A stretch of 63,274 nucleotides of DNA, filler included, from Choristocarpus tenellus KU-1152 (taxonomy: Eukaryota; Protista; Phaeophyceae), in assembly GCA_964200185.2 (NCBI GenBank). It is 8 parts of 8 records of this genome, joined end to end, with 100 filler letters (N's around TTAATTAATTAA, not from the genome) between each part and the next. Parts side by side here need not be neighbours in the genome. Positions count along the whole stretch, not along the records: positions 21,365 to 45,094 come from CAXNAD020000237.1; 7 more parts are not named here. One strand, 5' to 3'. Both the position numbers and the translations under genes were made by a program. Below are positions 41,856-44,314 of the stretch, piece by piece. The notes beneath the pieces are model-generated. The model was given only the letters and a program-made list of their open reading frames with translations, was not told where the DNA came from and ran no database searches. Position 1 is the first letter of the stretch, and every line of letters starts with the position of its first letter.

Positions 41856-44314
41856 TCACCGCATTGCAGCAATCCAATTGTCATAGAGTTCATTCTCATA
41901 CCTTGCAGTGCAACTTGAACCAGTGCATGTGTGTTCATCTTTTCCCAGAAGAAAATGATCTCCTACACCAGACCTTGCACCATGGACAACACAACGGCTG
42001 CGTACACCACCCTCTTGAGTCACTTGATCCTCCCCCTCACTTTCATTGTCACTCTGATCAAATCTAATGTGATGCCCACTCCATTCTGATGACGCCATAT
42101 TAAACTTTGCACCTGGTGGTGTTGCACCTTGTGAATGGCCCTTGACAGACACACTCCCCAACGGTTCCAACACTGCGCCCCTCCCCTTATCTTCGTTGCT
42201 TGCATCAACCTCTATTAATAAGTCACCATAGTAAGCTGTTGTTGTCTTCAGCTTCCCATTCAGGTACTGTTCTTCTACCTCACAGGCCAACACCCCCTCC
42301 CACTTGTTCTCCTGACTCCTACCATGCAAGCACAGCTCCTTCACCTGTTCAATATCCACATTCCTAGGCAAAAAAAAAGCCACATTCGGAGTAACTGCCT
42401 GTGCTGCTTTGAAAATACTCAGGGCGGTAAGTGGAGGGGGGATCATGGTGTGTAGATCAAAGATTTCCGACGATTGATAAGCTGGACCACCCCATGGAGG
42501 GGAGAGGAAGACAACATCCGCTCTGAGGGTAGGAAGGACATCCATCGCATCACCAAGAATGAACTCAATCCGATCCTCCACACCATAGATGGAAGCATTG
42601 TGCCTAAGAGGGAGATCGAGATTGTATGGGGGACAACAATCACATAAAAATTTTGGGAGGAGGCATTGGACATGGAAGGGTATGCATCTCCAAGCATTGG
42701 TGAAGGGATAAATAGTGACAAAGACGATACTGTGAAGCAGCTTACAACTTCGTAGTGCTGGTGAGAGAGAGGTGAATGTTTCAAAATGCAAGGAACTGCA
42801 GCACATGCAACCATGGTTTCAAGGGCCATCTTTGTAATGACCTCCAGCAAGAATCATTACATCATTCATGTCTCAGTACATAGACCACCTATTATTGTCC
42901 ATCATCCTCACCTGGCATATTGAAGCCTGATTGGATCAATATCAATTGCAATGACCAGGTGACATGTCATGGCAAGCTGGATGGCATTTCCTCCACAGCC
43001 CACAAATGGATCTACAACCACATCGCAGCGACAACGCTCTGCAATGTGTGAGGCTATACACTCCGGCGTTACAGAAAACCATCCCTCGTTGTCCAGGCGA
43101 ATCCCTCTGTCAAAGCGAGAGAAATATCGGTAGCGTTGCGCCCAGTACTTGTCCTGCACGTGGGCAAGGTGACTCTTCAAGCGAGAAACAATCTTCTCTA
43201 GACGAGAATCTTCAGGACAAACCCTTACTCGTTTGACTTTACGCTTTTTCTTCTGCTTCTGCTTCTTCCCCTTTCCCTTCCCCTTTGCATTCCCTTTCAC
43301 CCCACCCCTCTCGGGTTGCTCATTCTTTGCATCGATTTTGTTGTGCCTAACAGCACATGTGGCCCCTGTGTCATTGAAATCTCCAATTCTGGATAAATAG
43401 TCCTCTCCGCCGTCCTCACAGAAGGTAGCATGGTGAGGAATGGCGTCACCAGAGACTAAAATGTTGCTACAATCTGTCGCCGTACACAGGAACGATTCTT
43501 GACAATCCCCTTCCTCACAACATTCATCGCTTCCGGCAAACTGAGGGTGTTTGCTGGTAGTACGATCAGCATTATCGTCTCCCTCGCATGCGAAAGCATC
43601 TCCAGTCACTATCATGTCGCCAGGTTCCAAGTGTTCAAGGCACCACTGCTTAACCTCCAATGAGGAGATTTTCCTCACCCAGTTCCGAGGCACTCTCTGT
43701 TGGTTCCCATATCCTAGAAACGTCACCTGCACGTGTTCGAATACCTCATCATCTCTATCTCCGTCATCTTGCGCACAAGGTAGATTGTCAGATTGAGGTT
43801 CGATTCTTGCGGGGTACCACAATCCATCCGCATCGAAGAAGCACTCCACCACCATACCAGCAGATAAACTCTCCTCAGTGGGATTCCAGTGTGTCCCTTC
43901 ACTTCTGGACCTCTTCAACCTCAGCCTCCCCTCACTTTCACTCGTGCAACTGACGCTTTTCCGCTTTGGGGAATCTGGTGCCGTGGTATGTGGCGATGAT
44001 GCTCTCGCTCGCACTTTACTGTTGCTCGGGCTTACTCCTCCATAATCCTCACAGGTCTCAACTCCCACTCCCACATTATAGCAACTTCCCTCTTCCATAA
44101 CGACTCTCTCGGGAGTATCGCTGGCTGTCACTGGTTGATGCTGGTCATCTGGGAGAGAGTCGAGGATTTGCCTAACCCACGAAGAGACAATGCCCTTCAT
44201 CCACTTTAGGGCGTCAACCTGGATCGCATAGGGTTTATCCTGGAGCATCACTTTTGTGACAAGCAGTTGACAGACAGATTTGTCCATTTTCTCGTCATCT
44301 AAACCTGACACCAT
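41856..44314 (-). CDS. TGS1: Trimethylguanosine synthase with an N-terminal-half Tudor domain (~716 aa)
   Basis: Exons 44314-42912 and 42603-41856 (phase-2 GT-AG intron). [86 protein letters not shown]. An upstream exon is not excluded. Confidence 0.96.

What the first reader, a model, noticed from the sequence alone, without database searches (positions are those of the whole stretch)
43669..43867. SMN/SPF30-type Tudor domain fused in-frame into TGS1 (possible Rosetta-stone fusion for snRNP cap hypermethylation)
Seen: the same uninterrupted exon as the TGS1 catalytic N-half encodes [23 protein letters not shown]-(acidic insert)[22 protein letters not shown]. This aligns with SMN AIWSEDGCIYPATI...VVYTGYGNRE and gives an intact F/Y/F/Y/N cage (SMN W102/Y109/Y127/Y130/N132). 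Known: the SMN Tudor binds dimethyl-arginine tails of Sm proteins; metazoan TGS1 interacts with SMN and acts after Sm-core assembly; characterised yeast and human TGS1 have no Tudor. Inference: this lineage may recruit the cap methylase directly to methylated Sm proteins without a separate SMN bridge. I do not know whether this architecture has been reported.
Basis: partly seen in the sequence, partly recalled or inferred. Interest (0 to 1): 0.8.

Follow-up and report, generated by a model that had tools for sequence, protein, structure and literature searches.

The report
Tudor reader fused to TGS1 methylase
This brown-alga-type genome encodes the enzyme that hypermethylates the caps of small nuclear RNAs (TGS1) with a built-in Tudor domain, a module that normally reads methylated arginine; the pairing is real, recurs in several protist groups, and no searchable paper describes it.

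Summary
On the minus strand, one ORF with no stop codon (44314..42912) encodes a conserved N-terminal helix, a Tudor domain (aa 149-217, window 43664-43870), a lysine-rich stretch and the N-terminal half of the TGS1 catalytic domain. After a 308-nt GT-AG intron, exon 2 (42603..41856) completes a 716-aa TGS1.

Pfam misses the Tudor in this sequence (E 0.015), because about 15 extra acidic residues sit in the beta2-beta3 loop. Three other tests find it:
- A profile built only from uninterrupted TGS1-linked relatives scores 61.8 bits, against 8.4 at most in 2000 shuffles.
- Family profiles hit only solved methyl-arginine Tudors (Tudor, TDRD1, SPF30, SND1, SMN, TDRD3; E 1e-12 to 1e-7).
- The AlphaFold model is a five-stranded barrel (Z 9.3 to TDRD3, 8.5 to SMN).

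The cage residues F160/Y167/F199/Y202/N204 are intact.

The fusion is not specific to this genome. 54 of 228 retrieved TGS1-type proteins carry the Tudor: brown algae, probably Rhodelphis, and several unnamed protist clades. Plant TGS1 carries a WW domain instead, and animal and fungal TGS1 carry neither.

Binding to methylated Sm or snoRNP tails is a reasonable inference but untested. RNA-seq and the presence of SMN/Gemin2 could not be checked.

The parts
42912..44314 (-). TGS1 exon 1 (aa 1-467 plus two bases of codon 468). It starts at the first ATG, 17 codons after an in-frame stop, and ends at the donor CAG|GTGAGG.
   Evidence: The N-terminus aligns with brown-algal TGS1 and M1 is invariant.
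42604..42911 (-). Intron of 308 nt (GT..AG) that splits the Methyltransf_15 domain between profile positions 37 and 39.
   Evidence: Splicing gives ...[19 protein letters not shown]..., as in the homologues. The database's own 268-residue gene call uses the same junction.
41856..42603 (-). TGS1 exon 2: the C-terminal half of the catalytic domain (PPWGGP motif), then a tail with the conserved motifs WSGHHIRF and ENELYDNW, and the TGA stop at 41856-41858.
   Evidence: Pfam Methyltransf_15 at 86.1 bits, E 2.5e-24.
43664..43870 (-). Tudor domain, aa 149-217: beta1 154-160, beta2 165-171, beta3 194-199, beta4 205-209, and a short beta5.
   Evidence: Independent profile at 61.8 bits. PDB profile hits to Tudor, TDRD1, SPF30, SMN, SND1 and TDRD3. 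AlphaFold models. Foldseek top 50 are nearly all Tudor-type domains. VIA Z 9.3 to TDRD3 and 8.5 to SMN.
43748..43792 (-). Acidic insert S175-D189 in the beta2-beta3 loop: 15 residues more than in uninterrupted relatives. The whole loop is aa 172-194, window 43733-43801.
   Evidence: HMM alignment. pLDDT is low only in this loop. The same loop carries roughly 30 to 130 extra residues in other brown algae and an acidic insert of about 25 residues in P0044.
43703..43837 (-). Span holding the aromatic-cage codons: F160 (43835-43837), Y167 (43814-43816), F199 (43718-43720), Y202 (43709-43711), N204 (43703-43705).
   Evidence: Alignment to SPF30, TDRD1 and SND1, family alignment, coordinates.
43631..43660 (-). 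Helix aa 219-228 directly after the barrel, conserved in brown algae as (S/T)(P/L)EV..W.
44156..44236 (-). Conserved N-terminal helix aa 27-53 (DKPY..Q....L.W motif). It is followed by a disordered Ser/Pro/Arg-rich linker reaching to about aa 148.
   Evidence: AlphaFold pLDDT 84-89. Conserved in brown algae and in Heterococcus P0037.
43220..43303 (-). Lysine/arginine-rich stretch aa 338-365, NLS-like, just upstream of the catalytic domain.
   Evidence: Read from the sequence. Similar basic runs occur at this position in the homologues. The NLS function is an inference.

Best explanation
The finding is part of a two-exon gene for a 716-aa trimethylguanosine synthase (TGS1), the enzyme that converts the m7G caps of snRNAs and snoRNAs to m2,2,7G. 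Shown here: the polypeptide carries, about 175 residues upstream of the catalytic domain, a single prototypical Tudor barrel (aa 149-217). All four aromatic cage positions and the Asn are intact, and a 15-residue acidic insert sits in the beta2-beta3 loop. The architecture is conserved across brown algae and recurs in at least five other clades of protist TGS1. Inferred: the cage binds dimethyl-arginine in RG-rich tails of the proteins that mark TGS1's substrates. These would be symmetric dimethyl-arginine on SmB/D1/D3 and possibly asymmetric dimethyl-arginine on fibrillarin or GAR1. The enzyme would thereby be tethered to assembled Sm cores or snoRNPs, a job done in animals by TGS1-SMN and TGS1-SmB contacts. 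The lysine-rich stretch would supply nuclear targeting or RNA contact.
For: Gene model and catalytic domain. Orthology to brown-algal TGS1: and the tree (window groups with Discosporangium and the other brown algae; Heterococcus is sister, support 97). Tudor identity: independent profile at 61.8 bits against at most 8.4 in shuffles. All 29 PDB hits at E<=1e-5 are methyl-arginine-binding Tudors, while methyl-lysine Tudors (PHF20, PHF19) appear only at E>=0.003. AlphaFold barrel with pLDDT about 90 in the strands. Foldseek and VIA matches. Cage conservation across 20 TGS1-linked Tudors: Y167 in 20 of 20, Y202 in 19 of 20, position 199 aromatic in 18 of 20, position 160 aromatic in 16 of 20. Uninterrupted relatives pass Pfam: P0100 scores 27-28 bits on TUDOR against a cut-off of 23, 12 of 20 segments hit TUDOR, and 10 of 20 hit SMN_Tudor. 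Same-polypeptide evidence: a continuous ORF here and in Discosporangium, fused gene models in Ectocarpus, Scytosiphon and Ascophyllum, and EukProt entries P0281 and P0285 that carry both domains in one protein. From the literature: SMN bridges Tgs1 to snRNPs (PMC10473218), and an SND1-type Tudor binds methyl-arginine when at least three of four cage aromatics are present (PMC7743719).
Against: There is no binding, localisation or expression evidence of any kind. The Asn position varies in the family (N in 10 of 20, otherwise E, D, A, K, H, C or Y). Ectocarpus, Scytosiphon and Ascophyllum have His at the first cage position, so methyl-arginine reading may be weakened in some members. Sequence scores do not separate SMN/SPF30 from TDRD1 or SND1, so the ligand preference (symmetric versus asymmetric dimethyl-arginine, Sm versus other proteins) is open. 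Whether Sm tails of this organism are RG-rich and methylated, and whether SMN, Gemin2 or PRMT5 exist in it, could not be examined. Heterococcus, the nearest non-brown relative retrieved, has no detectable Tudor, so the domain can be lost.
Confidence: 0.6

Rival explanations
1. The Tudor is a structural or degenerate module. It would serve as a protein-protein or RNA-binding scaffold, or as a platform for the disordered loop, without reading any methyl mark.
For: The beta2-beta3 loop tolerates inserts from 15 to roughly 130 residues. His replaces the first cage aromatic in Ectocarpus, Scytosiphon and Ascophyllum, and the Asn position is variable. Pfam fails on all brown-algal versions. Some SND1 Tudors are thought to have diverged from methyl-arginine binding (PMC7743719).
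Against: In this window all five cage positions are intact. Across 20 diverse members the four aromatic positions are among the best-conserved columns outside the Gly/Asp/Val core, which is expected if the cage is under selection. In my reading of the model, the insert loop lies at the end of the barrel opposite the cage; this was not measured.
Confidence: 0.2
2. The Tudor reads a different mark or partner, such as methyl-lysine on histones or methylated RNA polymerase II CTD. It would then couple cap hypermethylation to chromatin or transcription rather than to Sm or snoRNP proteins.
For: Structure alone does not discriminate. VIA lists PHF1, PHF20 and UHRF1 Tudors at Z 7.7-8.2, close to SMN at 8.5. 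From general knowledge, not tested here: the human TGS1 orthologue was first described as a transcription-coactivator-interacting protein.
Against: Sequence profiles hit only methyl-arginine Tudors at E<=1e-5. Methyl-lysine Tudors come in at E>=0.003. The GYGN motif with its Asn matches the SMN, SPF30, SND1 and TDRD pattern.
Confidence: 0.12
3. There is no fusion. Two adjacent genes, an N-terminal Tudor protein and a separate TGS1, only look joined, as the public gene calls for this contig and for Discosporangium suggest.
For: The protein collection holds two calls on this contig, 313 aa and 268 aa, and two 'partial' NCBI models in Discosporangium, P0121 and P0034.
Against: The two calls lie in one frame with no stop between them, both here and in Discosporangium (437-aa ORF). 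The stretch left unassigned here contains the most conserved part of the enzyme, including SAM motif I, so the 268-aa call would be catalytically incomplete. Ectocarpus, Scytosiphon and Ascophyllum models, and the EukProt entries, are fused.
Confidence: 0.03

Closest known systems
TGS1 / PIMT trimethylguanosine synthase (yeast Tgs1, human TGS1; Pfam Methyltransf_15)
   Same: Catalytic domain with the same motifs and clear orthology: Pfam 29.3 and 86.1 bits on the two exons, and 53-79% identity to annotated TGS1 proteins.
   Different: It carries a Tudor domain and a lineage-specific N-terminal helix upstream of the catalytic domain. None of the animal, fungal or plant TGS1 proteins retrieved matches the Tudor profile.
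SMN and SPF30 (SMNDC1) prototypical Tudor domains
   Same: A single barrel of about 60 residues, the GYGN motif and a four-aromatic cage plus Asn. SPF30 has W/Y/F/Y/N and this protein F/Y/F/Y/N. Profile E 2e-11 to SPF30 and 7e-10 to SMN; Z 8.5 and 8.1.
   Different: No specific affinity to SMN over TDRD1, SND1 or TDRD3. No other SMN-family Pfam domain matched exon 1. It has an acidic insert in the beta2-beta3 loop and is attached to an enzyme rather than to an assembly chaperone.
Plant TGS1 with an N-terminal WW domain (Pfam PF00397 + PF09445)
   Same: Another lineage in which TGS1 carries a small peptide-reading module at its N-terminus.
   Different: WW reads proline-rich motifs, not methyl-arginine. 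It is an unrelated fold, and an independent acquisition by inference.
SND1 (Tudor-SN) and TDRD1 extended Tudors
   Same: Comparable profile scores (43.7-48.1 bits) and the same cage pattern, F/Y/Y/Y/N in SND1.
   Different: This protein has no flanking SN-like extension. The domain here is the bare barrel plus one helix.

Membership tests
Tudor domain (royal family; Pfam PF00567) | Five-stranded barrel of about 60 residues | tested here: met
   AlphaFold strands have pLDDT about 90. Foldseek top 50 are nearly all Tudor-type, probability 1.00. VIA Z 9.3 with 57 of 57 residues aligned to TDRD3.
Tudor domain (royal family; Pfam PF00567) | Score above the Pfam gathering threshold | tested here: not met
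   The window segment scores 15.8 bits against a cut-off of 23 and gives 0 families at E<=0.01. The uninterrupted relative P0100 passes at 27-28 bits, and 12 of 20 family members hit at E<=0.01. The failure is explained by the loop insert.
Tudor domain (royal family; Pfam PF00567) | Profile-level sequence homology to solved Tudor domains | tested here: met
   E 1.4e-12 to 8.5e-7 for 29 PDB sequences. An independent profile places the window at 61.8 bits.
Methyl-arginine-binding Tudors (SMN, SPF30, TDRD3, SND1, TDRD1) | Four-residue aromatic cage plus Asn | tested here: met
   F160, Y167, F199, Y202 and N204 align to the cage columns.
Methyl-arginine-binding Tudors (SMN, SPF30, TDRD3, SND1, TDRD1) | Binding of symmetric or asymmetric dimethyl-arginine | not testable with these tools
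   Needs ITC or NMR with methylated peptides.
SMN/SPF30 subfamily (Pfam PF06003 SMN_Tudor) | Specific match to the SMN_Tudor model, or closer to SMN/SPF30 than to other Tudors | tested here: inconclusive
   No hit for the window. P0100 scores 18.8 bits against a cut-off of 22.7. 10 of 20 relatives hit at E<=0.01, best 1.2e-6. PDB scores for TDRD1, SPF30, SND1, SMN and TDRD3 all lie within 8 bits of one another.
SMN protein | Gemin2-binding N-terminal region and C-terminal YG box | tested here: not met
   No SMN-family Pfam match outside the Tudor in exon 1 or exon 2 at E<=1. The protein is a TGS1.
TGS1 (Pfam PF09445 Methyltransf_15) | Score above the gathering threshold | tested here: met
   29.3 bits (exon 1) and 86.1 bits (exon 2) against a cut-off of 22. 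Together they cover profile positions 2-163 of 165.
TGS1 (Pfam PF09445 Methyltransf_15) | SAM-binding motif I and the PPWGGP motif | tested here: met
   [11 protein letters not shown] at aa 433-443 and SPPWGGP in exon 2. Their role is assigned from general knowledge of the family.
TGS1 (Pfam PF09445 Methyltransf_15) | Cap N2-methyltransferase activity | not testable with these tools
   Needs an enzyme assay.

The most novel reading that the evidence does not exclude
Tudor-TGS1 would be an old and widespread eukaryotic solution in which the cap hypermethylase itself reads symmetric dimethyl-arginine on the Sm ring. That would make an SMN bridge unnecessary. Lineages carrying the fusion may then have a reduced SMN complex or none, and the plant WW-TGS1 would be a parallel solution that reads the proline-rich SmB tail.
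Probability: 0.2. Interest if true: 0.7.

Novelty: new variant of a known kind. Interest (0 to 1): 0.5.

Why it matters
In animals, TGS1 is thought to reach freshly assembled snRNPs through SMN and the Sm proteins. Here the same logical link, a methyl-arginine reader joined to the cap methylase, is written into one polypeptide in many protists. This gives independent evolutionary support for that link. It also offers a simple system for asking how cap hypermethylation is coupled to Sm-core assembly: one protein, one domain, and defined cage residues to mutate. A practical point follows as well. The domain is invisible to Pfam in brown algae because of the loop insert. The gene is also split into two models in the protein collection's calls for this contig and in NCBI's annotation of Discosporangium, so automated domain-architecture surveys will miss it.

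Tried and rejected

Single-sequence tests of the window's Tudor were weak: Pfam E 0.015, PDB phmmer E 0.72, and Atlas feature scores up to 0.80. Only family profiles and structure resolved the question.

A homology search restricted to the Tudor region found only the window's own protein and Discosporangium.

The exhaustive profile search was swamped by multi-Tudor proteins: 3584 hits, and the 150 listed had 5-33 repeats each. It shows the profile is a genuine Tudor profile but could not count TGS1 fusions.

The Atlas search with P0100 returned TGS1 clusters with no Tudor-bearing cluster named.

The MTase tree leaves the backbone unresolved, so one origin versus several origins of the fusion is undecided.

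Rfam found nothing in the piece. The sigma-70 promoter scan is irrelevant to a eukaryote.

A mini-intron inside the acidic insert was considered and rejected. The only GT..AG pair there spans 18 nt, and relatives keep an in-frame insert at the same place.

A zinc-binding role for the Cys-rich linker (aa 230-330) was rejected because the cysteines are not conserved in Discosporangium.

The joined two-exon protein was never submitted to any tool. The exons were searched separately by reference, and only the exon-2 part entered the tree.

Complex prediction was not used, because methylated ligands cannot be modelled and the partner proteins of this organism are not in hand.

Full report
**What is there**

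The finding lies on the minus strand inside a 468-codon ORF, 44314..42908.

The same ORF continues through a Cys- and acid-rich linker and a lysine-rich stretch (aa 338-365). It then enters the conserved start of the TGS1 catalytic domain: [14 protein letters not shown] from aa 389, and the SAM motif [11 protein letters not shown] at aa 433-443. Pfam Methyltransf_15 matches aa 431-466 on profile positions 2-37.

The ORF ends just after a donor site, CAG|GTGAGG. A GT-AG intron of 308 nt (42911..42604) leads to exon 2 (42603..41856), which carries Methyltransf_15 profile positions 39-163 at 86.1 bits. The junction restores ...[19 protein letters not shown]..., matching every homologue. The public collection's own 268-residue gene call uses the same junction.

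The predicted product is 716 aa. I did not submit the joined sequence to any tool. The exons were searched separately.

**Is it a Tudor domain?**

Tested alone, the segment is below threshold: Pfam TUDOR 15.8 bits against a cut-off of 23, E 0.015, and PDB phmmer E 0.72. The cause is a 15-residue acidic insert (S175-D189) in the beta2-beta3 loop. Three independent lines settle the question.

- **Independent profile.** A profile built only from 15 TGS1-linked segments, none from this window or from brown algae, scores aa 149-217 at 61.8 bits. The maximum in 2000 shuffles of the same protein is 8.4 bits. Several of those relatives are recognised by Pfam directly: P0100 scores 27-28 bits, 12 of 20 segments hit TUDOR, and 10 of 20 hit SMN_Tudor.
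- **Solved structures.** Family profiles hit solved Tudor domains at E 1.4e-12 to 8.5e-7. All 29 hits at E<=1e-5 are methyl-arginine readers: Drosophila Tudor, TDRD1, SPF30, SND1, SMN, TDRD3 and Papi/TDRKH. Methyl-lysine Tudors appear only at E>=0.003.
- **Predicted fold.** AlphaFold gives a five-stranded barrel with pLDDT about 90 in the strands, low confidence only in the insert, and a following helix. The Foldseek top 50 are almost all Tudor-type domains. VIA gives Z 9.3 to TDRD3 (57 of 57 residues aligned), 8.5 to SMN and 8.1 to SPF30.

The cage columns read F160, Y167, F199, Y202 and N204. This is the SPF30 pattern W/Y/F/Y/N with Phe in place of Trp.

**How specific is 'SMN/SPF30-type'?**

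Not very. TDRD1 (48.1 bits), SPF30 (46.8), SND1 (43.7), SMN (42.0) and TDRD3 (40.5) score alike. The domain is a bare prototypical Tudor, like those of SMN, SPF30 and TDRD3 in size. It belongs to the methyl-arginine group, but no closer assignment is justified.

**Is the fusion real, and how widespread is it?**

The contig is CAXNAD020000237.1 of assembly GCA_964200185.2. That accession is adjacent to the Discosporangium mesarthrocarpum assembly.

On an MTase-domain tree, the window groups with Discosporangium and the other brown algae. The xanthophyte Heterococcus is sister to that group (support 97).

Ectocarpus spp., Scytosiphon and Ascophyllum models (610-800 aa) share the window's layout: N-terminal helix, Tudor, basic stretch and MTase. 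Their beta2-beta3 inserts are roughly 70-130 residues longer than the loop of uninterrupted relatives, which hides the domain from Pfam.

The collection splits this gene into two calls (313 and 268 aa). NCBI splits the Discosporangium gene into two 'partial' proteins. In both genomes the pieces lie in one stop-free frame. The unassigned stretch here includes SAM motif I, so the split is an annotation artefact.

Beyond brown algae, the Tudor precedes the MTase in several other proteins:
- a Tara Oceans picoplankton protein, P0100;
- EukProt entries P0281 and P0285, the latter labelled 'Rmarinus' and probably Rhodelphis marinus;
- several unnamed Logan and ENA proteins.

In all, 54 of 228 TGS1-type proteins retrieved match the Tudor profile, falling in at least five supported clades. 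Vertebrate, invertebrate, fungal and oomycete TGS1 proteins do not match. Plant TGS1 carries a WW domain instead. The tree backbone is unresolved, so one ancient fusion with losses cannot be told apart from repeated fusions.

**Conservation of the cage**

Across 20 diverse TGS1-linked Tudors:
- Y167 is invariant.
- Y202 is present in 19.
- Position 199 is aromatic in 18.
- Position 160 is aromatic in 16. It is His in Ectocarpus, Scytosiphon and Ascophyllum, and Asn in one protein.
- The Asn position is N in 10 and otherwise variable.

This pattern suggests a ligand-binding cage under selection, perhaps relaxed in derived brown algae.

**Mechanism**

Shown: the architecture, the fold, the cage and their conservation.

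Inferred: the Tudor binds dimethyl-arginine in RG tails of Sm proteins, and possibly of the snoRNP proteins fibrillarin and GAR1, and so tethers the hypermethylase to its RNP substrates. This fits the described role of SMN in bridging Tgs1 to snRNPs (PMC10473218). It also fits the rule that three of four cage aromatics suffice for methyl-arginine binding in SND1-type Tudors (PMC7743719).

Nothing here tests binding or expression. Whether this organism has SMN, Gemin2 or PRMT5 is also untested.

**Rivals**

- A structural, non-reading Tudor (0.2).
- A different ligand, such as methyl-lysine or the RNA polymerase II CTD (0.12).
- Two separate genes (0.03).

**Novelty**

Full-text searches for TGS1 or trimethylguanosine synthase together with Tudor found only papers on the SMN-TGS1 interaction, none describing a fusion. 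The brown-algal genome paper discusses domain fusions in general but mentions neither Tudor nor TGS1.

The proteins themselves are already in public databases. This is therefore an undescribed variant architecture of two well-known modules, not a new kind of system, and it is not restricted to this lineage.

**Limits**

The exhaustive profile search was dominated by multi-Tudor proteins and could not enumerate fusions. The taxonomy of most non-brown-algal carriers is unknown.

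Noticed in passing
window 42970-44314 (-); L003 4001-6804: Public gene calls split this TGS1 into two genes. Here they are 313 aa and 268 aa, the second starting at an internal Met after SAM motif I. In Discosporangium, NCBI lists two 'partial' proteins, P0121 and P0034, 49 nt apart. In both genomes the frame is continuous, so the splits look like annotation artefacts that hide the fusion.
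   Followed up: yes
window 33909-34232 and 38160-38594 (-): Two ORF fragments match the emp24/gp25L/p24 GOLD family at profile positions 37-94 and 125-182. This suggests a p24 cargo-receptor gene with an intron of about 4 kb, downstream of TGS1 on the same strand.
   Followed up: partly
window 44156-44236 (-), aa 27-53: A confidently predicted N-terminal helix (DKPY..Q....L.W) is conserved in all brown-algal TGS1 proteins and in the Tudor-less Heterococcus protein P0037. It has no Pfam match and its function is unknown.
   Followed up: partly
window 41874-41897 and 42060-42083 (-): The C-terminal tail after the catalytic domain keeps two short motifs, WSGHHIRF and ENELYDNW, shared with the Ectocarpus and Ascophyllum C-termini. 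Their function is unknown.
   Followed up: no
P0003, P0004, P0126, P0121, P0044 (beta2-beta3 loop of the Tudor): The same loop is an insertion hot spot. It holds 15 extra residues here, about 30 in Discosporangium, roughly 70-130 low-complexity residues in Ascophyllum, Ectocarpus and Scytosiphon, and an acidic insert of about 25 residues in the unrelated protist protein P0044.
   Followed up: partly
P0007, P0008, P0016, P0030, P0032 (Logan ORFs of brown-algal type): In many brown-algal genomic ORFs, the sequence just before ...DDGLWYP is unrelated to strand beta1. This suggests an intron between beta1 and beta2 in those species, which is absent from this window.
   Followed up: no
P0288 (Hondaea fermentalgiana), P0304 (MMETSP): Thraustochytrid TGS1 proteins lack the Tudor but share a different conserved N-terminal module of about 60 residues. 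From memory it resembles an Sm/Gemin6-7-like beta fold. This was not tested. It could be another snRNP-related fusion.
   Followed up: no
P0298, P0315, P0376 and other plant hits: Plant TGS1 carries a WW domain (PF00397) at the N-terminus. This is a different peptide-reading module at the same position as the Tudor.
   Followed up: partly
P0285, aa about 220-262: The 'Rmarinus' EukProt TGS1 may have a second, weaker Tudor-like stretch between the first Tudor and the catalytic domain. It was seen by eye only.
   Followed up: no
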